A DNA stretch of 64,000 nucleotides, from the NCBI GenBank assembly GCA_965112735.1, contig OZ218951.1:124001-188000 (forward strand), in the 5' to 3' direction. Of this stretch, positions 37,867 through 51,512 are shown in pieces. The notes beneath the pieces were generated by a model that was not told the DNA's origin, did no database searches, and worked only from the letters and a program-made list of their open reading frames with translations. The position numbers were made by a program, and so were the translations under genes. Source of the DNA: Phaeosaccion multiseriatum. Taxonomy: Eukaryota; Protista; Ochrophyta, other classes. The first letter of the stretch is position 1. Each line of letters opens with the position of its first letter.

Positions 37867-40800
37867 ATGAAGGCGGGCGCTGGGAGGAGTAGCTCTGCAG
37901 CCGTCGCCATCCTTGCGGCGGCGGCGTGGCTCACGGATGGGACGGAGGGAGGCGTGATCACAACCACGAGCGTCGGAAGCAGCTGTGCTTCCATTTACGG
38001 GACGCTGAAGTGCTGGGGACTGTAAGTGCCATGCATGCATCCACTTTTCTCTCTCTCTCTCTCTCTCTCTCTACTGATTCTACTTTTTTCGTCTTGTTTG
38101 CTCTATTCAGCTCTTCCCAAGGGCAGCTCGGCCTGGGGTCAACGCCCAGCGCCGCGGTAGGGGATTCAACAGGGGAAATGGGTGACAACTTGGACACCAC
38201 CGACATTGGGACTGGGCGCACTGCCATAGCGCTTGGCGGCTCTGACTCCAGCATGTGTGCCGTGCGGGATGACGGCACTGTGGTGTGCTGGGGATATAAT
38301 GACAAGGGCCAGCTCGGAGTGGTGAGTCTGTCGTAGGTGGCATCCATGACTGCCTTGCGTGGCGAGCATCAAGTATCACAACTGCAATGTGCTGCCTTTC
38401 TAACGCCTCCATTGTTCTCATTCATTGACCAGGGCCACAAAACCGAAATAGGCCTCTCAAGTGGTGAAATGGGTGACGACTTGACTTCAGTGGACCTCGG
38501 CACCACGGCCACCGACGTGTGCGGCGGTGAGCAAGTGCAAGAGATGGGAAGCCTACTCTAGCCTCTGTGCACTCCCTCAATACACCTCGCTCTCCCTTCT
38601 CTCCACCCCATCGTACTCACAGGTCAATACGGCCACTGTGCGCTGCTGAGCACATCAAATGTCAAGTGGTGAGGTTGGAGGCCTAGCGCTGTTCTTGGTG
38701 AGGTGACCCGCAATGCCTCCTTACCCGTCCCCCCGTTTCTGTCTTTTCCGCCTCCTCCAGCTGGGGAGATAACTCTTACGGGCAGCTTGGACAGGGAAAC
38801 AAAGACACGTTGGGAGACAGCTCCGGAGAGATGTCTTCGTTGGTAAGACGTTGCATGAGGGCCAGACCCAGGTGTAGGTGTGGGTGGGGGAGAGGGGGGG
38901 GGGAGCCTAACCAATCAGATGACGAAACCCTCGCCTCACATCCTCTCTGATTGATTCTGATTGTGTCTGATGTCTGCCCTCCCTGGATCGCTCATGACCG
39001 AAAGGCCGTCATTGACTTGGGGAGTGGAGTCACGGCAACGGCGATCACATGCGGCTATGTTCACAATTGTGTGGTAAGTGAACAGGGAGTTGGAGAGGGC
39101 GAGACGGGTGCCACAGGCACAAGACTGATCAATAACGCCTTCTTCTCTTGCCCTGCTGTGCGCCGTGCTCCCGTACAGATCACGAACACGGCCAGCGTCA
39201 AGTGCTGGTGCGTACTCAAAACACTCCTTCTATGCCGCCTGTTGTCCAAAGGGGGCCCTCATCCGTCTGTGCGCTCTCGTCATCCACTGCCTCTCGACAG
39301 GGGAAACAACGCATGGGGCCAGCTGGGCGTGGATGACGGGGACCCCATTGGAGACGGCGCGGGGGAGATGGGGGACAGCTTGGGGGAGACCGATTTGGGA
39401 GGGAGTTACACCGCCCTTGCAATTGTGGCAGGCAAATATCACACTTGCGCGGTGAGACGAAGAGCCAACGTCGAGGACGAGCGAGGCGGAGTACTCTCTG
39501 GTGATAACTGATGTCCTCCCATGGCACTCCTGCCTCTCCCCCTTTGTCTCCGCGCTATCTCGACGCTCCAGATCCGAAACACCAACGACGTGGTGTGCTG
39601 GGGAGAAAATGACTACGGTGAGCTGCTGCAAGGAGGGAATGGTTTTCGTAACGTGTGGTCTGATGGGGGAAAAGCGAAGAGATAGACGGCATGCGGAAGA
39701 GCGAGAAGGGGCTCCCAAGGCCGCCTGTCACCACGAGTGTGATCACTGCCCCTCACACCTCTCTTCCCCGCACCCCTTGCCTCTCTGCTGCCTCTGCCTT
39801 CCTTCCCTGCTGCTTCCAGGCCAGGTATATGGATGCAAAGCTTGAAGCAAGCAAACACCCTGAGAAGATGCGCCAGTGCGCCAGAGGCCAGCCGAAATGG
39901 ACTCTGCTAAAGTGGCGCCCGCCCTCTCTGCCCCCCTCTCTCATCATCGCCCCCCTCTCTCGTCCTGTCCTGTCTCCCTTCCATTTACTGCCATCCCCTG
40001 TCCTGTCCTGTCCTGTCCTGTCCTCTCAGCTCGGCGTTGGTAGCACGACTGACATCGACAACACAGCCGAATTCGCCGCCATGGCAAGTGATGAAGGCTG
40101 AGCGGTGGTGTATGTTGCGGTTACCGTTCAGCTGCAGAACGAGTCCCCCTTCCTCCCTCATCCACCCATCTGCCATCTTGTGCTTTGCTTGTTCGCTCGT
40201 CTCAGACGGCCATTGACCTGGGCACCGGCAGAAACGCCACGGCCATCGCGGCGTGCTATACTTCCACGTGCGCCATTCTGGACACAGGTGGGTCACAAAG
40301 GCATACGTTGCTGGGTCTTGCTGCCCCCTCCCCTCTTCGAATCTTCACACGACTATACCTTGCTTCATTTCCTCCTCCCCTCCCGCCCGCCCCGCAGGAG
40401 ACGTCAAGTGTTGGGGCAGGAACGATTACGGAGAGCTTGCTTCAGGGAACAGTCTTGACCTCGGGAACGGGTCGGGTGAGATGGGCGATAGCTTGAGCGT
40501 CCTCGACTTTGGCACGGGGCGGACTGCGGTGTCCATCAGCGGCAAGGGCAACCACTTTTGTGCGGTGCTGGACAATGACGACATTGTCTGTTGGGGACGC
40601 AACAACTAGTAAGTATTCCGAAGGGAGCAGCAGCTAGGCCGTTAGCCAAGGCATCTGATGGACGGCTTGCTTGCTTGCCTTGCTTGTCCTGCCCCCCTCT
40701 TCCGATACAATGTCTTCCTTCCCAGTGGCCAAGCGGGCATAGGCAGTTCTCAGTCCGCGGTTGGTACCTCCTCCGGAGACCTTAGTCTTGTGGCTGTCGA

Positions 40801-43800
40801 CGTGGGGACGGTGCCCTCACCAGCGCCCACCGCCGCCCCGACCCAGGTAATAATATGTATAGCCGTCACTACCCTCGATTCCCATCTGTAGCGATCTAAT
40901 CATGCTCCAACACAGCTCCCACGGTGGCCCCAACCCAGGCCCCCACTCTGGTACGGTGGTGCTGCTGCCTTGCTTATACGCCTCATGCCGGCGTGTGCCC
41001 CCCCTTACGTTTGGCACTCTTGCTCATCGCCCTTTCTGAAATTCCTTTCTCCTCAGGCGCCGACGGCTGCTCCAACAACAGCTCCCACGGTGGCCCCAAC
41101 CCAGGCCCCCACTCTGGTACGGTGGTGCTGCTGCCTTGCTTATACGCCTCCTGCCGGCGTGTCCCCCCCCTTACGTTTGGCACTCTTGCTCATCACCCAT
41201 TCTGAAATTCCTTTCTCCTCAGGCGCCGACGGCTGCTCCAACAACATCTCCCACGGCGGCCCCAAGTCTGGCCCCGACTCAGGTTTGTACTGCCATCTTT
41301 GCACCTTTTTGCTGCCTCTCTTTGTTGGACTGTTTAGGCCCAACCAACGCCTTCCCTCTTTTGGTGCCTCTGTTCTCAGGCGCCTGCGGCGCCTTCGACC
41401 CCTGCCCCAACGGCCGCCCCAACCACAGCGCCGACGAGAGTCCCCACTGAGGTCAGTGGTAGCTGCTGCCTGTCAGTGGCTGCCGTCCTTGCTCCCGGCG
41501 GGGGTGAGGTAGACTCTCCCGTCAACGACCTTCCTCGCTTCCCTCTCGCTGCCCCTCTTTCTTGTTCTCGTCAGGCTCCAACTCAGGCACCAACTCGGGC
41601 ACCAAGTCAGGCACCAACAGCTGCGCCTACTCAGGTTAGGGCTAGGGTTAGGGTTAGGGTTAAGTGACTGCACTGGACCCTTTCTCTCCCTTCTTTCCTG
41701 AGTGACTGAGGAAGGGCGGAAGCCTTCCTGAGTGAGGGAGTGAGGGAGGGAGGCAGGGAGCCTGAGTGAGTGAGTGGATAAGTGGGGGAGGGAGGGAGGG
41801 AGGGAAGGGGCGAGGAAGTTTCTTTCCTGCCTTCCTTCCTTCCCTCCTTTCTTCCTTCCATTCTTTTCTTCCTTCCTTCCTTCGTTCCTTCGTTCGTTCG
41901 TTCCTTCCTTCCTCCCTTCCTCCCTCCCTTCCTTCCTTCCTTCCTTCCTTCCTTCCTTCCTTCCTTCCTTCCTTCCTTCCCTCCTTCCTTCCTTCCTTCC
42001 TTTCTTCCTTCCTTCCTTCCTTCCTTCCTTCCTTCCTTCCTTCCTTTCTTTCTTCCTTCCTTCCTTCCTTCCTCTCTTCCTTCCTTCCTTCCTTCCTTCC
42101 TTCCTCCCTTCCTCCCTCCCTTCCTTCCTTCCTTCCTTCCTTCCTTCCTTCCTCTCTTCCTCCCTCCCTCCCTTCCTTCCTTCCTTCCTCCGTCCCTCCC
42201 TCCCTCCCTTCCTTCCTTCCTTCCTTCCTTCCTTCCTTCCTTCCTTCCTTCCTTCCTTCCTTCCTTCCTTCCTTCCTTCCTTCCTTCCTTCCTTCCTTCC
42301 TTCCTTCCTTCCTTCCTTCCTTCCTTCCTTCCTTCCTTCCTTCCTTCCTCCCTTCCTTCCTTCCTTCCTTCCTTCCTTCCTTCCTTCCTTCCTTCCTTCC
42401 TTCCTTCCTTCCTCCCTCCCTCCCTTCCTTCCTTCCTTCCTTCCTTCCTTCCTTCCTTCCTTCCTTCCTTCCTTCCTTCCTTCCTTCCTTCCTTCCTTCC
42501 TTCCTTCCTTCCTTCCTTCCTTCCTTCCTTCCTTCCTTCCTTCCTTCCTCTCTTCCTTCCTCTCTTCCTTCCTTCCTTCCTGCCTTCCTCCCTCCCTTCC
42601 TTCCTTCCTTCCTTCCGTCCTCCGTCCCTCCCTCCCTCCCTTCCTTCCTTCCTTCCTTCCTTCCTTCCTTCCTTCCTTCCTTCCTTCCTTCCTTCCTTCC
42701 TTCCTTCCTTCCTTCCCTCCTTCCCTCCTTCCTTCCTCTCCTCCTTTCTTCCTTCCTTCCTTCCTCCCTCCCTTCCTTCCTTCCTTCCTTCCTTCCTTCC
42801 TTCCTCTCTTCCTCCCTCCCTTCCTTCCTTCCTTCCTTCCTTCCTTCCTTCCTTCCTTCCTTCCTCCGTCCCTCCCTCCCTCCCTTCCTTCCTTCCTTCC
42901 TTCCTTCCTTCCTTCCTTCCTTCCTTCCTTCCTTCCTTCCTTCCTTCCTTCCTTCCTTCCTTCCTTCCTTCCTTCCTTCCTTCCCTCCTTCCTTCCTTCC
43001 TTCCTCCCTCCCTCCCTCCCTCCCTCCCTCCCTCCCTCCCTCTCTCCCTCCCTCCCTTCCTCCCTCCCTCCCTCCCTCCCTCCCTTCTTTCCTTCCTTCC
43101 TTCCTTCCTTCCTTCCTTCCTTCCTTCCTTCCTTCATTCATTCATTCCTTCCTTCCTTCCTTCCTTCCTTCCCTCCCTCCCTCCCTCCCTCCCTCCCTCC
43201 CTCCTTCCCTCCTGCCTTTCTTCCTGCCTTCCTTCCTTGTCAGGCCCCAACGACGGCCCCAACAGCTGCCCCAACTGCCGCCCCAACGGCCGCCCCAACG
43301 ACCGCCCCAACAGCCGCCCCAACCAACGCCCCCACCACGGCCCCGACAACAGCTCCTACAAAGGTAGTGTTTGCTCTGATTCCACCCCTCCTGCGGCTCT
43401 CTCAACCCGTGCTGCCCCTCTCTTGCGCTGGTCTATCCTCGACTCTGTCATTCCTCCCCTCTCGTCAGGCGCCAACAGCAGCACCAACAGCAGCACCAAC
43501 AGCAGCACCAACAGCAGCTCCAACAGCAGCTCCAACAGCAGCCCCTACAGAGGTGAAAAAAGAAAAAAAGGAAAAAAAAACCAAAAAAAGGGTGGGGTTC
43601 CTTTGCCACTTGCTGTGACGGGTCGCTCAGCCAGCGTGACTTGTTCGGCACGTCGTCTTGCTTGTCGTTGCTTTGGTGTGTGTCCGTACGAGATGTTGTT
43701 CCCCCCTCAGCCTGGACTCATGCTTGCTTTTGCCTCCCGACTGAATGTTGTGTGCCAGGCACCTACCCTCGCCCCTGCGCTACCGACCGAGGGCACCTAC

Positions 43801-44553
43801 GTCATAGGCACTTGGGAGCTCAAGGGAGAGGACGCCAGCTCGGCTGAAGCTGAGGACTTACTCACTGCCTTCCTCTTCGCATTACGGGTTATCGCCGGTG
43901 GGAGCGCACAAGATGCGGTCATCACCAAGGTGGAAGATGGCAGCGGAGGGTCCAGGAGGAGACTCTATGGGCCGGGGTCCGAGGTAGCGCTGAATCACAT
44001 GCCGCCGTCTCCCCGAATATCGTCGTTGAGCACAGCAGCAAGCGCGGAGGTGAGCTTCCTCGTGGATGGCTTCACCTCCAGCGCCGCCGCCACACAAGCA
44101 GCCGCAGATCTGCGGCAGAGCTTTGAGGACGGAGAGTTCCTGACCCGCGTGTGGGACTATATTGTTGCCTTCCGAACGACAACGACGACAAGCGCAGACA
44201 CTGAGCAGCCGGCAGCGTGGGCCATCCTCAGCTTCACAGTCACGGCCGTGCTGGAAGGGGTCGACGGCAGCGGGTCGGAGGGGTCCATAACAGCGACAAC
44301 AATCGCTCTCATCGCCGCGGCGGTGCTCGGCGGTGTCCTCCTCGTGGCAACTGCGCCATTCTGCCACCATACGAGAATAGACTTCAAGTACCACGCCCGC
44401 AAGGCCCGCGCAAAGGTGCATCCTACGTTGGGGGGTAGGCCAGACAAGCTCGTGCTGGTGAAGAGCATCCATCACAATGACATGCACATGCCCGAAAGCG
44501 TTCTCAAAGCCCTCCCGGATAACCATGAGGAGGACTCCGAGGATTTGCTGTGA
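37867..44553 (+). CDS. Receptor-like type I membrane protein A: signal peptide, 7-blade RCC1/BLIP-II propeller, TAAP mucin-like stalk, RRL-containing juxtamembrane domain, TM, short tail; ~21 exons
   Basis: Propeller exons: 37867-38021, 38111-38321, 38433-38526, 38623-38668, 38761-38842, 39005-39073, 39179-39207, 39301-39451, 39572-39617, 39820-39824, 40030-40083, 40206-40287, 40398-40608, 40726-40846. These give seven CWGxNxxGQLG-type motifs with GDxxGEMGD inserts. Six stalk exons lie at 41057-43552. Last exon 43759-44553 carries the TM (IALIAAAVLGGVLLVATAPF). Confidence 0.85.
41820..43240. repeat. ~1.4-kb (TTCC)n/(TCCC)n polypyrimidine microsatellite inside a stalk intron of receptor A
   Basis: Read directly. 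Confidence 0.95.
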
Positions 44554-45290
44554 AGCAAAGGGGATGTATCTTGCGAGTACTAGCAGCTGTGTTGGGCCAT
44601 TTGCTTCGCAGTGCGGGTTGTCATCGATGGAAGTGGCTGTGCAACGTGCGATCATCACAAATGTGGAGGATGGCGCGGAGGCAGGGATGGGTCCAGGAGG
44701 AGCCTCTTTGGGCCAGGGTCCGAGGCGGGGCTGAATCACGTGCCACCTGCCGAACACCGTTGTTGAGCATAGCAAGCGGGGAGGTGAGCTTCCTCGTCAA
44801 TGGCTCCACCTCCAGCGCAGCCGCCACACAAGCAACTGCGACGAAGCGTTGCAGATGGATGGTTCCTGAGCCTGGGCCGCGTGTGGGACTAGCTTTCGGC
44901 CTTCCGCGCGGCGACGACGACAAGCGCAGACACTGAGCAGCCGGCAGCGTGGGCCATCCTCAGATTCACAGTCACGGCCGTGCTGGGAGGGGTCGACGGC
45001 AGCGGGTCGGAGGGGTCCATAACAGCGACAACAATCGCTCTCATCGCCGCGGCGGTGCTCGGTGGTGTCCTCCTCGTGGCAACTGCGCCGTTCTACAATC
45101 GAAGGAGAGCAGATCTCACGTACCAGCCACGCACGCAAGGCCCGCACGAAGTGCACCCTGCCCTGTGAGGGGCAACAAGCCAGAAAAACTCGTGGTGGTG
45201 TAAAGAGCCCCTACCACCACGACATACGGGTGCCTGAGCGCGTGCTCACCCAAGGCCCTCGCCGAGCGATAACAGCCATGGAGTGAAGAG
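44554..45290 (+). pseudogene. Decayed tandem duplicate of the terminal exon of receptor A (juxtamembrane domain + TM + tail)
   Basis: 44910-45093 is nearly identical to 44200-44360 and its upstream flank (GVDGSGSEGSITATTIALIAAAVLGGVLLVATAPF). Flanks carry indels and stops (GACTAT to GACTAG at ~44890; TGA at 45166). Confidence 0.75.
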
Positions 45291-45747
45291 GCAGGAGGAG
45301 CCCTCCCTCCAAGGATTTACAATAAAGCAAGCGTAACACAGCGAACACCTCACATAGTCCAGAGGCCTCCGTAGCGAGCCTGATGGTCGGTCTTACTGAA
45401 GTACGGATTTTTCTTCATCGAGCACACTAAGGAGAGCATGAAAACGGCCGAGCTGCCTCTTCTCTCTTTCTTTACAAGCAACTCCCTTTGTGTGCGTGTG
45501 ATTCTGCTGGCTGCTACTCGAGGGCTTTCCCATCCAAGCCTCCTCCTTCTCCCCGCCTATTATAGGAAATTGAAACTCTGTGGGGGTACTGTAGGGGGCT
45601 TCTTTTTTCCGAAACTGTCTTTTTCCGAAACTGTCATTCTGTCAAAAATATACTCTTTCCCCCTCGATTTGCCTCGTGCCCCCTCTTTTTTTGCTCTCCA
45701 GACCAAGTCCTCACTCTTTCAATGAATCTGAGCTTGCTGCGCGGCAC

Positions 45748-48700
45748 ATGAAAGTCCACCCTGCTGGCAGAAGAGGCGGTCCAGCCGTCGCCATCAGTGT
45801 GGCTGCAGCGTGGCTCACGAATGGGACGGACGGTGTGATCGTGGCCCTCTCAGCTTCGCATACTTGCGCTTCGGTGTACGGCACTCTGAAATGCTGGGGA
45901 GAGTAAGTTTCATGGGTCACGTCCTCTTTTGCCCCTCTCAATCATCGCGCACCGGCCTTTGTTGCTGATCGGCCCTGCTTGTCTGCTTGCTTGGCTTGGC
46001 TGTCTGCAAGGAGGATCCCGTTCGTTGTGAGCTGCTGCCAGTAGCTACGCTACTGAACTTGGACTGGTGCTCACGTTCCTGCTCTACTGCTGTTCCTCCA
46101 ACTTGTTTGTTCAGCTCTTCAGAAGGGCAGCTGGGCCTGGGGTCTGACCCAGGGGGCAATGTGGGGGATTCATCGGGGCAGATGGGTGACAACTTGGGCA
46201 CCACCGACATTGGGACTGGGCATACAGCTATAGCACTTGGCGGCTCTGAAAGCAGCATGTGCGCCGTGCGGGATGACGGTACTGTGGTGTGCTGGGGATA
46301 TAATAACAAGGGCCAGCTCGGAGTGGTGAGTCTGTTGGAGAGGTTCATTTTAAAAAGCCCAAGGTTGTTATCGTCAACAAACTTTTCTAATGTCTCCTGC
46401 CTACTGCGTATTGTACCCTCTCACCAGGAGGACACCAACGCTGTAGGGCTCTCAAGTGGTGACATGGGTGACAACTTGAATTCGGTGTACCTCGGCGCCA
46501 CGGCCATCGACGTGGACGGCGGTGAGAAGAGGTGGAAGCCTGCTGTAGCTTGTACTTCTGTAGCACTGTGTACCCACACCCTCGTCTCATCACGGCCTTT
46601 TCTGTCCATCGCATTCACAGGCGAATACGGTTACTGCGCCCTGCTGAGCACATCTAACGTCAAATGGTGAGGTTGGAGAGGGAGGAATGCCGAAAAATGG
46701 CTGGGGGGGGGTGCAAGCCATGCCTCCTTACCTCCTCAATACACCTCCCCCCCTTCCGCCCGCCTCCTCCAGCTGGGGAGCCAACAATTACGGGCAGCTC
46801 GGACAGGAGAACCAAGATGATTTGGGAGACGATTCCGGAGAGATGACTTCGTTGGTAAGACGGCACGACGAGGATCAGACCCAGGGGGGTAGGTGTAGGT
46901 GTAGGTGGGGGAGAGGGTGGAGTCTATCCAAACCAAATGGCCCGACCATTGCCTCACGCCCGCTCTGACTGTGTCTGATGTCTTCCCTCCCTCCTGGATC
47001 GCTCATGATCGAAAGGCCGTCATCGACTTGGGGAGTGGAGTCACGGCAGCAGCGATTGCGTGTGGCACTCATCACAATTGTGTGGTAAGTGAACAGGGAG
47101 TTGGAGAGGGCAAGACGGGTGCCATAGTCAGAGGACTGATCAAGCAACGCCTTCTTCTCTTGCCCTGCTGTGTGCCGTGCTCCTGTACAGATCACCAACA
47201 CGGCCAGCGTCAAGTGCTGGTGCGTACTCAAACACTCCTTCTATGCTGTCTTTTGTCCAAAGGGGGCCTCATCCGTCTGTGCGCTCTCGTCATCCACTGT
47301 CGCTCGACTGTATGCAACTCTAATAACAGGGGTCGCAATAATGACGGACAGCTGGGCGTGGACACCGACGACAAAATTGGAGACGATTCAGGGGAGATGG
47401 GGAGCAGCTTGGCCGATGTCAACCTGGGAGGGAGTGCCAACACCGCCATCGCAATTGCGGCAGGGGAGGCTTTCAGCTGTGCGGTGAGATGGAAGAGCCA
47501 ATGTGGAGGATGAGCGCGGTGAAATACTCTCTGGTGATTATTAATGTCCTCCCTATGGCACGTCTCTCTCCCTCTGCTACTTGGGCGCCTTCTCGACGCT
47601 CCAGATCCGAAGCACCAACGACGTGGTGTGCTGGGGAAGAAATAACGCCGGTGAGCTGCTGCAAGGAGCGAATGGTTTTCGTAACGAGTGGTCTGATGGG
47701 GGGAAAGCGAAGAGATAGACGGCATGCGGAAGAGCGAGAAGGGGCTCCCAAGGCCGCCTGTCACCACGAGTGTGATCACTGCCCCTCACACCTCTCTTCC
47801 CCGCACCCCTTGCCTCTCTGCTGCCTCTGCCTTCCATCCCTGCTGCTTCCAGGCCAGGTATATGGATGCAAAGCTCGAAGCAAGCAAACACCCCGAGACG
47901 ATGCGCCAGCAGGCCAGCCGAAATGGCCTCTGCTAAAGTGGCGCCCGCCCTCTCTGCCTCCCTCTCTCATCATCGCCCTGTGCCTCTCGTCCTGTCCTGT
48001 CCTGTCCATCCACTGCCATCCCCTCTCCTGCCCTGTCCTGTCCTCTCAGCTCGGCATTGGTAGCCAAGATAACATCGATGACGCAGCCGAATTCGCCGCC
48101 ATGGCAAGTGATGGAGGCTGAGCGGTGGTGTATGTTGCGACTGAGGTTCAGCTGCCAAACGAGTCCCCCTTCCCCTCTCATCCACCCATCTTGCCATCTT
48201 GTGCTTTGCTTGTTCGCTCGTCTCAGACCGCCATTGACCTGGGCACAGGGAGAACTGCCACGGCCATCGCGGCGTGCTTTACTTCCACGTGCGCCATTCT
48301 GGACACAGGTGGGTCACGATGGCAGCACGCATGGCTGGGCTGCAAGCATTTCGCTTTTTAAGGCGCCTGGCCTTGCTTCTGCCTACCCGTCTCGAAACGC
48401 CCCATTCCCGCTTCCCTTTGCCCGCCCTGCAGGTGACGTCAAGTGCTGGGGAATGAATGACAACGGACAGCTTGCTTTAGGGCACAGTGACGACATCGGG
48501 GACGAGTCTGGAGAGATGGGCGACAGCTTAGATGCAATCGACTTTGGCACAGGGCGCACTGCGGTATCCATCACCGGCAAGGGCGAAGGTTTCTGTGCCG
48601 TGCTGGACAACAACGACATTGTCTGTTGGGGTCTCAACAACTTGTAAGCACTACGAAGGGAGAAGCTCGGTCACGAAGGCCACTGACCAACACCGCACAC

Positions 48701-51512
48701 CTGACGGAATGGAATTGCCTTGCTTGCCTTGCTTGCCCAACCTTCCTCTCCCGATGTAATTCCCTCCCTTCCTAGTGGCGAAGTGGGCATCGGCCACGCT
48801 AATACGGTTGGCGACAGCTCCGGAGATCTACCTCTTGTGGCCGTCGACGTGGGCAACGTGCCCACCCCGGCACCCACCGCCGCTCCGTCCCAGGTAGAGT
48901 AGGTAGAGGCACTATCCGCTGCCCTCACATCTCCTATCTGTAGCTGCCCTTCCTTCCTCCCTTCCTTCCTTCCTTCCTTCCTTCCTTCCTTCCTTCCTTC
49001 CTTCCTTCCTTCCTTCCTTCCTTCCTTCCTTCCTTCCTTCCTTCCTTCCTTCCTTCCTTCCTTCCTTCCTTCCTTCCTTCCTTCCTTCCTTCCTTCTTTC
49101 TTTCCTTCCTTCCTTCCTTCCTTCCTTCCTTCCTTCTTTCATTCCTTCCTTCCTTCCTTCCTTCCTTCCTTCCATTCTTCCTTCCTTCTTTCCTTCCTTG
49201 ATTCCTTCCTTCCGTCCTTCCTTCCTTCCTTCCTTTCATCCTTCCTTCCTTCCTTCCTTCCTTCCTTCTTCCTTCCTTCCTTCCTTCCTTCCTTCTTTCC
49301 TTCCTTGATTCCTTCTTTCCTTCCTTCCTTCCTTCCTTCCTTCCTTGCTTGCTTGCTTGCTTCCTTCCTTCCTTCCTTCCTTCCTCCCTCCCTTCCTTCC
49401 TTCCTTCCTCCCTTCCTTCCTTCGCTGCTTCCGTACTTTTTTCTTGCTTGCTTGCTTCCTTCCGTACATCCTTCCTTGCTTGCTTCCTTCCTTGCGTCCT
49501 TGCTTCCTTGCTTCCCTCCGTCTGCTCCTACCTGACGCTTAAATCGTCCGTCGCGCTTCCCAGGCCCCAACAGCAGCTCCAACACTAGCTCCAACAGCAG
49601 CTCCAAGTACAGCTCCAACAACAGCTCCAACAGCAGCCCCAACCGCAGCCCCAACAGCAGCTCCAACAGCAGCCCCAACAGCAGCTCCAACAGCAGCCCC
49701 AACAGCAGCTCCAACGGCCGCCCCAACAGCAGCTCCAACAGCAGCTCCAAGTACAGCTCCAACATCAGCACCAACAGCGGCACCAACAGCAGCTCCTACG
49801 TCAGCACCAACGGCGGCACCAACAGCCACACCAACATCAGCTCCTACGGCAGCTCCAATAGCCACACCAACATCAGCACCAACAGCAGCACCAACAGCCA
49901 CACCAACAACCACACCAACATCAGCACCAACATCAGCACCAACAGCCACACCAACATCAGCACCAACATCAGCACCAATAGCGGCACCAACATCAGCACC
50001 AACAGCGGCACCAACAGCCACACCAACATCAGCACCAACAGCGGCACCAACAGCCACACCAACATCAGCACCAACAGCCACACCAACAGCCACACGAACA
50101 TCAGCTCCAACAGCGGCACCAACAGCCACACCAACATCAGCACCAACAGCGGCACCAACAGCCACACCAACATCAGCACCAACAGCCACATCAACATCAG
50201 CACCAACAGCGGCACCAACAGCCACACCAACATCAGCACCAACAGCGGCACCGACATCACCGACTGTCGCAGCGCCTACAGCGGCACCCACAGCGGCGCC
50301 TACGAAGGTATGTCTCGACGATGCTTGCCTTGGGCAGATGTTCTCCTACTGACCTGACGGGCAGCGCTTGATGATGAGGAACGCTCTGCTGGCGCTGCTG
50401 CTGCAACTCACTCATTCCCTCTCTTGTGCCCTGGGGTATCCTCCATTCTCTTTTTTCTCTCTTCACGCCAGGCACCAACGGCAGCACCAACAGCAGCCCC
50501 AACGGCCCCACCTACCGCACCTCCGACGCTCGAGCAGCTTCCGGACGACTTCGGTGTCGATTCTCTCAACTACCTCAATGGGAGTTGCGTGCTGGTCGGG
50601 CTTAACGCAGACACCTTTACTCCGAGCCTACAGACCTACTTTATGCTGTCAATCAGCGCCCTTTCGTCGGTGGTGGAGGCAGAGGATATGATGTACATTG
50701 TCTCCATTCGTGACGTGCTCTGGACATCAGAGGAGGAGGAGGCGCGTCGATTGCAGCTCCAAAGTCCTTCACTTGTCCCACCACTCTCTTCCACCCCGCT
50801 ACACGTGCCACCGTCGGCACTAGAAGGAGCAGCAGCGGTGGCAGGGACAGCAAGCCAGGCATCGGTGCCGAACCATGCCATTACAGCCCCCTTTCTGCTG
50901 GGAGTCCGTGAAGGGCAAGAACAACAGGGTGGAGGGGTAGAGGGCTGGAAGAAGAAAGGCGAGGAGGACTGGCCACAACGAGGGCAAGGTGCAGCAGTGG
51001 CGGAGGTCCAGAGGCGACAGCTGTCGTCGCCAGCGAGCAATGCAACCAGCAGCAGCGCCGTTGAGGTGTCCTTCCTGGTGTTGGGCTTTGCCTCCGCCTC
51101 AGACTGCAGCACCGCTGCGGCCGAGGTGTTGCAAGGAGAGAGCAGCGGTGCCCTCCAAGATTCCTTTCTATCGATTGTTGAGGTGGCCAACTTCGTCCTA
51201 TGGGCGGTGCTAGAGGAGGAGGAGGGCCTGGCGGTCGAGCTCATCATCTTCGTCGCCGCGACGAGCAGCGGGGCAGCCCTCTTCCTCCTCTACTGGGCGG
51301 TGCTCTGCTTGCCCGGCCAGTGGGCCACAGCCAAGTACATAACTCGGCGGGTGCGGTACGGCTTGCCCAAGCACCTGGGCGGCAAGGAGCAGGTGCGAGT
51401 GCACGTAATGGGAGACTTCATCGACGACATGGTCATCTCCGACGACGTGCTGAGGGCCATGCCCCCGAGGACCGCATACTCCAAGCCGCCCAGCGAGGAG
51501 AGTCTCCTCTGA
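45748..51512 (+). CDS. Receptor-like type I membrane protein B, tandem paralogue of A (RCC1 propeller + TAAP/TSAP stalk + TM)
   Basis: Same exon-intron layout as A through the propeller, including the 5-nt exon 47853-47857 and the GC donor at 48104. The stalk is one 744-nt exon (49564-50307). The last exon has TM IIFVAATSSGAALFLLYWAVLCL and ends SEESLL*. Confidence 0.85.
48948..49520. repeat. ~0.55-kb (TTCC)n microsatellite in the propeller/stalk intron of receptor B
   Basis: Read directly. Confidence 0.95.

What the first reader, a model, noticed from the sequence alone, without database searches (positions are those of the whole stretch)
37867..51512. Tandem RCC1-propeller surface receptors with hypervariable loops flanked by near-identical introns: candidate algal recognition system
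Seen: two paralogues share the architecture signal peptide / 7-blade RCC1 propeller / mucin-like stalk / TM / tail. The 202-nt intron 39618-39819 differs from 47651-47852 at only 4 positions by my alignment. The 46-nt exon before it differs at 6 positions, all non-synonymous (IRNTNDVVCWGENDY vs IRSTNDVVCWGRNNA). The 54-nt exon 40030-40083 differs from its counterpart at 10 positions, only 1 synonymous (LGVGSTTDIDNTAE vs LGIGSQDNIDDAAE). Other changes also fall in the Gxx(H/F) and WGxNxxG loops: CGYVHN/CGTHHN, AGKYHT/AGEAFS, KGNHF/KGEGF, WGRNDY/WGMNDN. Known: RCC1/BLIP-II propellers bind partners through such loops, and brown-algal ROCO-LRR and NB-ARC-TPR candidate immune genes diversify by exon shuffling. 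Inference: diversifying selection and/or intron-mediated exon exchange in a family of ligand receptors (pathogen, prey or self/non-self recognition).
Basis: partly seen in the sequence, partly recalled or inferred. Interest (0 to 1): 0.8.

Follow-up and report, generated by a model that had tools for sequence, protein, structure and literature searches.

The report
Tandem propeller surface genes, homogenised introns
Two neighbouring genes of an alga-like eukaryote encode cell-surface proteins with a propeller-shaped head whose exposed loops differ strongly, while several introns have been kept almost identical by copying between gene copies. This is the pattern of a diversifying recognition-gene family.

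Summary
Gene 1 (37867-44553, 21 coding exons, 868 aa) and gene 2 (45748-51512, 16 exons, 1046 aa) share an identical 14-exon layout for a 7-repeat RCC1 propeller. Both have a 5-nt microexon and a GC-AG intron.

- **Intron versus exon divergence.** The 202-nt intron differs at 4 positions (98%). The adjoining exons differ at 6/46 and 10/54 positions, nearly all non-synonymous.
- **Whole-propeller selection.** dN/dS is 0.41, so the gene as a whole is under purifying selection.
- **Where the differences fall.** They concentrate in the WG-x-N-xx-G and G-xx-H loops (27/52 residues against 70/338, p=7e-6). These are the AB and CD loops, which lie on one propeller face.
- **Third copy.** A contig from a public run varies at the same positions (8-9 of 10).
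- **Mosaic ancestry.** The closest pair among the three copies switches from segment to segment (chi2=95, p=6e-15). The same intron in the third copy is only 66-70% identical.

The introns are therefore homogenised by gene conversion rather than conserved for a function, and selection keeps or renews the loop differences. Primate L/M opsin genes show the same dynamic.

The receptor function is inferred, not shown. First-stage notes, unchecked, report similar RCC1-propeller surface genes on other pieces of this genome.

The parts
37867..44553 (+). Gene 1, 21 coding exons, 868 aa: signal-like N-terminus, 7-repeat RCC1 propeller, Ala-Pro-Thr stalk in 7 small phase-0 exons, juxtamembrane region, TM, about 70-aa tail
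   Evidence: Splice-site and frame model, stop-free translation. Pfam RCC1_2/RCC1 on exons. Hydrophobic peak at residues 779-807.
45748..51512 (+). Gene 2, 16 coding exons, 1046 aa, same architecture. The stalk is one 744-nt exon.
37867..40846 (+). Propeller-coding exons E1-E14 of gene 1 (gene 2 counterpart 45748-48893). Seven C-x(8-10)-C-W-G units in each copy.
   Evidence: Protein identity 73%.
39618..39819 (+). Intron I9 of gene 1, 202 nt, GT-AG. It is 98% identical to 47651-47852.
   Evidence: 132-nt identical run. No Rfam match, no unusual fold (z=+0.9), no inverted repeat.
47651..47852 (+). Intron I9 of gene 2
39820..39824 (+). 5-nt microexon GCCAG (gene 2: 47853-47857). It supplies the G-Q of the GQLG motif.
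   Evidence: The frame closes only with it. Retaining I10 would stay in frame in gene 1 (205 nt) but not in gene 2 (192 nt).
39825..40029 (+). Intron I10 of gene 1 (gene 2: 47858-48049), 94.7% identical
40084..40205 (+). Intron I11 with a GC donor (GCAAGT) in both genes (gene 2: 48104-48226). 92-93% identical between genes 1 and 2, 66-70% to the third copy, which has a GT donor.
39572..39617 (+). Exon E9 (gene 2: 47605-47650): 6 differences, all non-synonymous, 5 of them in the 3 changed codons of the WG-x-N-xx loop and 1 at N282S
40030..40083 (+). Exon E11 (gene 2: 48050-48103): 10 differences in 7 codons
39301..39451 (+). Exon E8 (gene 2: 47330-47483): 75% identical, pS 0.45, pN 0.27. An old or swapped-in exon between younger introns.
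38998..39300 (+). Homogenised tract A (end of I5, E6, I6, E7, I7), 88-95% identity per 100 columns
39572..40290 (+). Homogenised tract B (E9 to E12), 89-100% identity per 100 columns
41057..43552 (+). Stalk exons of gene 1 (60-120 nt each, phase 0). They are interrupted by a 1.6-kb intron holding TTAGGG-like repeats and a (CCTT)n microsatellite.
49564..50307 (+). Stalk exon of gene 2, 248 aa of Ala-Pro-Thr/Ser repeats
43759..44553 (+). Terminal exon of gene 1: juxtamembrane region without a Pfam match, TM, conserved tail ending in E-D-L-L
50472..51512 (+). Terminal exon of gene 2, homologous TM and tail (30% identity), ending in E-S-L-L
44604..45290 (+). Degenerate copy of the terminal exon (79% to 43875-44506), with frameshifts and stops in all frames. 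A relic of a lost array member.

Best explanation
**What it is.** These are two members of a multi-copy family of type I membrane glycoproteins.
- Each displays a rigid seven-bladed RCC1/UVR8-type propeller with a conserved cysteine pair in every blade. I infer that these form disulfides.
- The propeller sits on a long Ala-Pro-Thr stalk.
- The stalk is followed by a juxtamembrane region, one membrane helix and a short conserved tail ending in an acidic di-leucine-like motif.

**How it evolves.**
- Shown: the copies exchange sequence by gene conversion or unequal recombination, and several introns are more alike than the exons around them.
- Inferred: the exchange homogenises the introns and the exons that encode scaffold strands.
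- Inferred: selection removes exchange events that would make the exposed AB and CD loops alike.
- Inferred: at least in exons E9 and E11, selection also favours new loop variants. These are probably brought in as short patches from other copies.

**How it most likely works.** Each copy binds a different extracellular ligand on the variable face. The tail probably couples binding to sorting or uptake.
For: **Gene models and architecture.**

**Introns more alike than exons.** I9 98%, I10 95%, I7 94.5%, I6 92%, I11 92%. Against this, E8 75%, E11 81%, E6 84%, E9 87%.

**Younger centre.** Neutral divergence is lower in the centre than in the flanks: four-fold sites 0.12 against 0.24-0.33, central introns 0.066. 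The 132-nt identical run has permutation P<1e-4.

**Mosaic ancestry with a third copy (L002).**

| Segment | g1=g2 : g2=g3 : g1=g3 |
|---|---|
| I11 | 29:5:1 |
| I12 | 10:35:2 |
| E13 | 18:16:21 |
| I14 | 6:5:19 |

Heterogeneity chi2=94.7, p=6e-15.

**Introns are not constrained.** I11 is only 66-70% identical to the third copy. A more distant copy matches only the last ~54 nt of I9 plus the microexon.

**Loop variability.**
- Loop positions differ at 27/52 residues against 70/338 elsewhere, p=7e-6. dN/dS is about 2.0 at the x positions and 0.03 in the strand block.
- The third copy differs at 8/10 and 9/10 of those positions against 23-24% elsewhere.
- E9+E11: pN 0.18, introns 0.047, p=1e-4.

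**Fold and faces.**
- AF2 model of a 50%-identical homologue: pLDDT 97. Its closest solved folds are UVR8 and RCC1-like domains.
- Differences by loop class: AB+CD loops 42%, BC+DA loops 20%, strands 11%.
- The variable G-xx and WG-x-N-xx residues align with W337/R338 and W302/K304/F305 of UVR8.

**Extracellular adaptation.** A Cys pair per blade is present in both copies and in 254 of 257 fetched homologues. CRINKLY4 ectodomains have one disulfide per blade (bioRxiv 10.1101/2020.08.10.245050).

**Copy number.** Read depth of 2-6 single-copy units lies on the locus at 80% likeness or more.

**Precedent.** Intron homogenisation with selected exon divergence in tandem genes is documented for L/M opsins (PMC3213168).
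Against: - Only two full copies and one partial third copy were available, so no site model or tree-based test could be run.
- dN/dS for the whole propeller is 0.41. The excess at the loop positions is not significant against local synonymous sites.
- No donor copy for the loop patches was found.
- It is not proven that the third copy (Logan contig of SRR29999184) comes from the same genome and not a close relative. The incongruence argument holds either way.
- Faces were assigned from strand order in a model of a homologue and from alignment to UVR8, not from coordinates of these proteins.
- No ligand, localisation or expression response is known.
- RNA support is limited to a few spliced contigs of one small run that the tool itself labels 'DNA?'. 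No contig was seen across the microexon.
Confidence: 0.58

Rival explanations
1. Neutral, mechanical bias. The loops are simply unconstrained and drifted apart long ago. Conversion tracts are aborted wherever mismatches are dense, so only the less diverged segments are homogenised. No adaptive diversification is involved.
For: E8, E6 and E12 carry excess synonymous as well as non-synonymous divergence relative to their introns, as expected for old sequence that escaped conversion. The same loop positions are also the variable ones across 44 distant homologues (consensus).
Against: Neutral introns should have been at least as diverged as the loops before conversion, yet they are the homogenised parts. 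In E9+E11 synonymous divergence is young (0.095; P=0.009 against 0.35) while non-synonymous divergence is 0.18, four times the intron value. Unconstrained sites inside a young tract should sit at about 5%, not at about 45%.
Confidence: 0.17
2. The near-identical introns are conserved because they work. For example they could be splicing enhancers needed to recognise the 5-nt microexon, or an intronic regulatory element.
For: The best-conserved introns (I9, I10) flank the microexon. A more distant copy retains similarity over the last ~54 nt of I9 plus the microexon (joints 39604>39766 and 39828>40227).
Against: I6, I7 and I11, far from the microexon, are also 92-95% identical. I11 is only 66-70% identical in the third copy. 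The distant copy does not match the rest of I9 or I10 at 80%. I found no Rfam family, no stable fold (z=+0.9) and no repeat structure. I10 differs by indels (205 against 192 nt).
Confidence: 0.07
3. The shared intron is a recently inserted mobile intron (introner).
For: First-stage notes report introner-like elements elsewhere in this genome (unchecked).
Against: In the window the sequence occurs only at the homologous position of the two genes. There are no terminal inverted repeats or target duplications. Neighbouring introns show the same high identity.
Confidence: 0.03
4. Assembly artefact: collapsed or cross-polished haplotypes or paralogues create false identity.
For: Extra contigs 94-97% identical to gene 1 exist (variants not matching gene 2). 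Alleles or very recent copies therefore complicate this locus.
Against: The two genes differ in stalk structure, tail and most introns. k-mer contigs of three runs reproduce gene-1-specific and gene-2-specific sequence at similar single-copy depth (about 540-580 in X1). Depth rises to about 3-4 units over the shared intron. An artefact would not spare the exons.
Confidence: 0.03

Closest known systems
CRINKLY4 (CR4/ACR4) receptor kinase ectodomain (plants; PDB 7a0k; bioRxiv 10.1101/2020.08.10.245050)
   Same: Single-pass membrane protein with an extracellular seven-bladed propeller of the RCC1/UVR8/BLIP-II fold group. There is one conserved cysteine pair per blade, and a putative binding groove lined by poorly conserved loops.
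   Different: CR4 has short (~39 aa) crinkly repeats, a TNFR-like cysteine-rich domain and a cytoplasmic kinase. Here the repeats are 58-62 aa, a long Ala-Pro-Thr stalk replaces the CRD, and the tail is about 70 aa with no catalytic domain. Structural similarity of the homologue model to CR4 is modest (TM 0.50-0.58) compared with UVR8 (0.80-0.91).
UVR8 and RCC1-like domains (RCC1, HERC, RPGR)
   Same: Same fold, and the best structural matches. The variable loop residues align with the UVR8 interface residues of the GWRHT and WG-W-N-K-F motifs. An RCC1-like domain under positive selection is known in HERC5 (PMC4021598).
   Different: Those proteins are cytosolic or nuclear, lack the per-blade cysteine pairs, and are not membrane-anchored.
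Bacterial 'alpha-tubulin suppressor-like RCC1 family' proteins (COG5184-type; Oligoflexales and Actinomycetota MAGs) and BLIP-II
   Same: Closest by sequence among the proteins listed (45-51% identity over about 400 aa). They share the G-E-M-G-D insertion and the C-x(8-10)-C-W-G pairs. BLIP-II binds its target through loops on one propeller face (my own knowledge).
   Different: They are intronless, and some listed proteins carry 14-40 matched RCC1 stretches rather than 7. I did not examine them for a stalk, membrane helix or tail of this kind.
Primate L/M opsin tandem genes (PMC3213168); also MHC exon 2 versus introns
   Same: Tandem paralogues in which exon divergence exceeds intron divergence. 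Conversion tracts lie mostly in introns, and exon and intron trees disagree. The explanation given is gene conversion plus selection against homogenising functional exons.
   Different: In opsins a few tuning sites are held by purifying selection. Here dozens of loop positions on a binding face differ, and some show an excess of non-synonymous change over neutral sites.
Membrane mucins (PTS stalk + SEA + TM)
   Same: Pro/Thr/Ala-rich stalk, a juxtamembrane alpha/beta region, one TM helix and a short tail. A language-model search gave mucin-16 SEA, CD34, collectrin and MSB2_C as leads (scores 0.71-0.82).
   Different: No Pfam SEA hit. The structure prediction was unusable (pLDDT 37). The head domain is a propeller.

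Membership tests
RCC1 / RCC1-like domain propeller (PF00415, PF13540, PF25390) | Profile match above the curated cut-off | tested here: met
   RCC1_2 scored 33.5, 40.5 and 30.2 bits (cut-off 22), and RCC1 scored 24.0 bits (cut-off 21.7), on single-exon translations.
RCC1 / RCC1-like domain propeller (PF00415, PF13540, PF25390) | Seven tandem repeats of about 50-70 residues | tested here: met
   Seven units of 58-62 aa anchored on C-W-G in both genes. The last is closed by the N-terminal strand.
RCC1 / RCC1-like domain propeller (PF00415, PF13540, PF25390) | Seven-bladed beta-propeller fold | tested here: met
   Tested by proxy. The AF2 model of a 50.6%-identical homologue has pLDDT 97.2. Foldseek top hits are UVR8 (TM 0.80-0.91) and RCC1, HERC and RPGR domains. 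The window proteins themselves could not be submitted because they are spliced.
RCC1 / RCC1-like domain propeller (PF00415, PF13540, PF25390) | Guanine-nucleotide exchange on Ran (RCC1 proper) | not tested
   Unlikely for a protein with a signal-like N-terminus, a stalk and a TM helix.
CRINKLY4-type receptor | Extracellular propeller with one disulfide per blade | tested here: inconclusive
   Seven C-x(8-10)-C-W-G pairs are present in both copies. Bond formation and topology are inferred, not shown.
CRINKLY4-type receptor | TNFR-like cysteine-rich domain and cytoplasmic kinase | tested here: not met
   No Pfam family in either terminal exon. The stalk is Cys-free Ala-Pro-Thr repeats, and the tail is about 70 aa.
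Membrane mucin (SEA-type) | SEA domain next to the membrane | tested here: inconclusive
   No Pfam hit. The Atlas lead scored 0.82, below its own reliability line. The AF2 model had pLDDT 37.
Concerted evolution of introns with selected exon divergence (L/M-opsin type) | Paralogue divergence higher in exons than in the adjoining introns | tested here: met
   Central exons differ at 81/431 positions against 54/822 in the introns. Synonymous sites against introns give p=5e-4 in the young tracts.
Concerted evolution of introns with selected exon divergence (L/M-opsin type) | Conversion tracts located in introns | tested here: met
   All five identical runs of 40 nt or more lie wholly or mostly in introns. 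The longest is 132 nt, with P<1e-4.
Concerted evolution of introns with selected exon divergence (L/M-opsin type) | Different segments give different sister pairs | tested here: met
   Three-copy informative-site counts switch by segment, chi2=94.7, p=6e-15.
Concerted evolution of introns with selected exon divergence (L/M-opsin type) | Polymorphism-versus-divergence contrast within populations | not testable with these tools
   No population sample is available. Only hints of allelic or recent-copy variants were seen.
Introner (mobile intron) | Many near-identical copies at non-homologous sites; terminal repeats or target duplication | tested here: not met
   Only the two homologous positions occur in the 64-kb window, and there are no inverted repeats. 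The genome-wide count is not testable here.

The most novel reading that the evidence does not exclude
The family is a germline-encoded, hypervariable recognition repertoire of a unicellular or simple alga, used for pathogen, prey, symbiont or mate recognition. It is built on an extracellular disulfide-braced RCC1 propeller. On this reading it diversifies by patchwise gene conversion among many paralogues, with the homogenised introns serving as the homology tracts. That would be functionally analogous to MHC, plant NLR/RLP or lamprey VLR diversification, but on a fold not previously used for this purpose. The propeller may have been acquired from bacteria, since the closest sequences listed are bacterial, and filled with introns afterwards.
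Probability: 0.3. Interest if true: 0.82.

Novelty: new variant of a known kind. Interest (0 to 1): 0.62.

Why it matters
Little is known about how free-living algae and other protists recognise viruses, bacteria, prey or mates at the cell surface. This locus offers a concrete candidate. It is a multi-copy receptor-like family whose exposed loops differ much more than neutral DNA right next to them, with clear traces of sequence exchange between copies.

It gives a testable set of residues (the AB and CD loop 'x' positions). It also gives a tractable evolutionary model: introns as homology tracts and exons as the protected or renewed parts. In addition, it shows an extracellular use of the RCC1 fold outside land-plant CRINKLY4. 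The 5-nt microexon conserved in both copies is a useful benchmark for gene prediction in this genome.

Tried and rejected
1. **Known RNA in the conserved introns.** The Rfam scan at E<=1 found only sub-threshold microRNA/snoRNA look-alikes on a GGGA/CCTT hairpin at 41736-41928, and nothing in I6-I11.
2. **Structured RNA or transposon ends in I9.** Fold z-score +0.9, no inverted repeats.
3. **Other copies in the window.** blastn and tblastn found none beyond the two genes, the pseudo-tail and a stalk duplication.
4. **Exhaustive representative search with exon E13.** The 150 listed hits were dominated by proteins with 14-40 matched RCC1 stretches. The family's own cluster was not listed.
5. **Word-indexed search with the stop-free frame across I9-E10-I10-E11.** No hit.
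6. **Word-indexed search with the tail exon and with E13.** One Logan relative each (P0153, P0188). These gave contigs L001 and L002.
7. **JGI metagenome scan with E13.** Best hit 59% identity, so no orthologues.
8. **Bacterial contig L003.** An unrelated bacterial RCC1 locus.
9. **Structure of the juxtamembrane/tail exon.** pLDDT 37, not used for fold search.
10. **Spliced full-length proteins.** These could not be submitted to the search or folding tools because they have no single reference.
11. **Literature searches.** Most 'RCC1' hits in algal papers are Roscoff culture-collection strain numbers. The sea-urchin 185/333 family is not a precedent, because its intron is more diverse than its exons.

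Full report
**1. What is there**

The region holds two head-to-tail genes on the + strand. I derived both models from GT/GC-AG junctions and frame continuity.
- Gene 1 is 37867-44553, with 21 coding exons and 868 aa.
- Gene 2 is 45748-51512, with 16 coding exons and 1046 aa.
- Exons E1-E14, which encode the propeller, have the same boundaries and phases in both genes.
- Both have a 5-nt microexon (GCCAG; 39820-39824 and 47853-47857) that completes a G-Q-L-G motif.
- Both have an intron with a GC donor (40084 and 48104).

The microexon is required. In gene 2 the downstream intron is 192 nt, so retaining it breaks the frame. In gene 1 it is 205 nt and would stay in frame.

One candidate 35-nt stalk exon (40916-40950) is a partial duplicate, and it breaks the frame if included. 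I left it out.

**2. The protein**

- Single exons match Pfam RCC1_2 and RCC1 above the curated cut-offs.
- Each protein has seven units of 58-62 aa ending in C-W-G. Each unit carries a second Cys 8-10 residues upstream.
- The same pairs are invariant in an alignment of 44 homologues.
- A model of the closest listed homologue (50.6% identical) is very confident (pLDDT 97). It matches UVR8 best (TM 0.80-0.91), then RCC1, HERC and RPGR domains. The CRINKLY4 ectodomain matches more weakly.
- After the propeller comes an Ala-Pro-Thr stalk. In gene 1 it is seven small phase-0 exons. In gene 2 it is one 744-nt exon.
- Next is a ~190-aa region with no Pfam match, then one strongly hydrophobic helix.
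- The tail is basic and conserved between the two genes (K-Y, L-G-G-R/K, V-L-K/R-A). It ends in E-D-L-L or E-S-L-L.
- The signal peptide, the disulfides, the glycosylated stalk and the sorting role of the C-terminal di-leucine are all inferences.

**3.

| Segment | Result |
|---|---|
| I9 | 4 differences in 202 nt |
| E9 | 6 in 46 nt, all non-synonymous |
| E11 | 10 in 54 nt, one purely synonymous codon |
| I6, I7, I10, I11 | 92-95% identical |
| I8 | 85% identical |
| I1-I5, I12, I13 | align only with many gaps (17-129 gap columns each); 73-89% identical over ungapped columns |

The longest identical run (132 nt, 39671-39802) lies wholly in I9 and exceeds every one of 10,000 shuffles, whose maximum was 71. 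All five runs of 40 nt or more lie in or across introns.

**4. Selection**

- For the whole propeller, dN/dS is 0.41 and dS is 0.45.
- Neutral divergence is not uniform. Four-fold sites differ at 0.24-0.33 in the flanks but at 0.12 in E6-E12, and the central introns differ at 0.066. The centre therefore shares a more recent history.
- Within the centre, non-synonymous divergence (0.16) exceeds intron divergence.

| Segment | pN | pS | Flanking introns | Test |
|---|---|---|---|---|
| E9+E11 | 0.18 | 0.095 | 0.047 | non-synonymous vs intron p=1.2e-4 |
| E8 | 0.27 | 0.45 | I7+I8: 22/206 | syn p=4e-6, nonsyn p=3e-4 |

In E9+E11 the synonymous count fits the intron rate. It rejects the old rate of 0.35 (P=0.009). 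In the other central exons synonymous sites also exceed the intron rate (p=5e-4).

Two things are therefore superimposed.
- Exon sequence that escaped homogenisation: E8, and parts of E6 and E12.
- A local excess of amino-acid change in segments that were homogenised: E9 and E11.

Six of the 16 changed codons in E6, E9, E11 and E12 differ at two or three positions. That is hard to reach by single mutations in the time that gave 3-5% intron divergence. I think templated patches from other copies are the likelier source, but I found no donor.

**5. Where the differences fall**

- The 'x' positions have pN 0.45 and dN/dS about 2.0.
- The block that forms strands B and C has dN/dS 0.03.
- I mapped the differences on the strand order of the homologue model:

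| Class | Share of residues that differ |
|---|---|
| AB loops | 47% |
| CD loops | 41% |
| DA connections | 22% |
| BC loops | 11% |
| Strands | 0-19% |

- In a four-strand meander the AB and CD loops lie on the same face. That face has 51/121 differences against 32/161 on the other (p=7e-5).
- The alignment to UVR8 puts the variable G-xx residues on W337/R338 of GWRHT. It puts the WG-x-N-xx residues on W302/K304/F305. From my own knowledge of the UVR8 structures these lie on the dimer and partner-binding face. I did not check this in a paper here.

**6. More copies and exchange**

*Read evidence.* DNA contigs of three runs were laid at 80% likeness or more.
- They give 2-6 single-copy depth units along gene 1.
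- They show variants that belong neither to gene 1 nor to gene 2, including S360N, L361I and G368S.
- One copy joins the start of I9 to the start of I11, a 446-nt deletion.
- One small run behaves as spliced cDNA. It joins 38021 to 38111 exactly. It also carries paralogue transcripts spliced at I2 and I12 with different loop letters.

*Protein-database evidence.* Two Logan contigs of SRR29999184 were recovered.
- L001 is a tail exon 71% identical in protein to that of gene 1.
- L002 runs from the end of E11 past E14.

*Three-way alignment.*
- Genes 1 and 2 are sisters in I11 and E12.
- Gene 2 and L002 are sisters in I12.
- All three are equidistant in E13.
- Gene 1 and L002 are sisters in the next intron.
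- The heterogeneity is chi2=94.7, p=6e-15.

This shows recombination or conversion among copies, whether L002 is a paralogue or comes from a close relative. It also shows that I11 is free to diverge (66-70% to L002), which argues against functional constraint on the introns.

L002 differs from genes 1 and 2 at 8/10 and 9/10 of the predefined loop positions, against 23-24% elsewhere (p=4e-4 and 5e-5).

**7. Rivals**

- The conserved introns hold no Rfam family, no stable fold and no terminal repeats.
- The sequence is not found elsewhere in the window, so an introner is unlikely.
- Constraint for microexon splicing may explain the last ~50 nt of I9, which a distant copy also keeps. It cannot explain 92-98% identity over six introns.
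- A neutral 'mismatch-blocked conversion' model explains the old exons, but not the young synonymous and high non-synonymous pattern of E9+E11.
- An assembly artefact would not spare the exons. It is also contradicted by copy-specific contigs at single-copy depth.

**8. Comparison with the known**

- The evolutionary mode matches tandem L/M opsin genes. There, exon divergence exceeds intron divergence, conversion tracts lie in introns, and exon and intron trees disagree (PMC3213168).
- An extracellular propeller of this fold group with one disulfide per blade is known from plant CRINKLY4 (bioRxiv 10.1101/2020.08.10.245050). This family lacks the CRD and the kinase and is not a member.
- Positive selection on an RCC1-like domain is known in HERC5 (PMC4021598).
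- The closest sequences listed are bacterial RCC1-family proteins.
- In the searched literature I found no description of a membrane-anchored RCC1 propeller on a mucin-like stalk in algae.
- First-stage notes, unchecked, report several such genes and another 5-nt RCC1 microexon on other pieces of this genome.

**9. Verdict**

This is a real and unusual locus: a new receptor-like family showing a known evolutionary dynamic. The sequence patterns and the exchange between copies are shown. Surface location, ligand binding on the variable face and any role in recognition are inferred.

Noticed in passing
window 39820-39824 and 47853-47857: A 5-nt microexon (GCCAG) between two ~200-nt introns is conserved in both genes. 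It is needed for the reading frame and the GQLG motif. A first-stage note reports another such RCC1 microexon elsewhere in the genome.
   Followed up: partly
window 40084 and 48104; L002:14: Intron I11 uses a GC donor (GCAAGT) in both window genes. The third copy has GTAAGT at the same place.
   Followed up: partly
window 44604-45290: A degenerate copy of the terminal exon lies just after the gene 1 stop codon, with frameshifts and stops in every frame. Near its start its protein motif (R-A-I-I-T-N-V-E-D-G) matches the L001 paralogue and not gene 1. It is probably a relic of a lost array member.
   Followed up: yes
L001:1088-1163: In the paralogue contig, a gene-1-type tail exon and its stop codon are followed about 70 nt later by an acceptor-like CAG. 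After that comes a fragment 88% identical to the gene-2-type tail exon (window 50626-50701). This could be a rearrangement relic or an alternative terminal exon.
   Followed up: no
window 39640 > 40087 (read joint): DNA contigs at single-copy depth in three runs join the start of I9 to the start of I11, removing the microexon and E11. A spliced contig of run X5 has 46 letters between E8 and E12, which would fit that copy. It may be a transcribed pseudogene.
   Followed up: no
window 41636-43243 and 48940-49530: Both genes carry a long (CCTT)n microsatellite in an intron between stalk exons. In gene 1 it is preceded by TTAGGG-like telomeric repeats (41636-41662) and a GGGA/CCTT hairpin that draws sub-threshold microRNA hits in Rfam.
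   Followed up: partly
window 40903-41118 and 41068-41284: A 94.5%-identical tandem duplication of a stalk exon plus intron. The first copy lacks the 5' part of its exon and would break the frame if spliced in.
   Followed up: partly
window 38951-39508: Introns I6 (105 nt) and I7 (93 nt) of gene 1 are in frame and stop-free. This gives a 186-codon open frame across E6-I6-E7-I7-E8. In gene 2 the same introns are 106 and 110 nt, so this is probably chance, but one X5 contig seems to keep I7.
   Followed up: partly
window 38350-38414, 40452-40539 (read variants): Contigs at about single-copy depth differ from gene 1 by 2-6% at sites where gene 2 has other letters. They include the non-synonymous changes S360N, L361I, G368S and S389T. 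This points to a second allele or a very recent extra copy.
   Followed up: partly
P0080, P0098, P0091 and others: The closest full-length propellers among the listed hits are bacterial MAG proteins (Oligoflexales, Actinomycetota), 45-51% identical, with the same Cys pairs and GEMGD insertion. Green-algal fragments (Pyramimonas, Gonium) are 47-49% identical. The intron positions in the window genes do not repeat from blade to blade. Both facts are compatible with bacterial origin and later intron gain, which I did not test.
   Followed up: no
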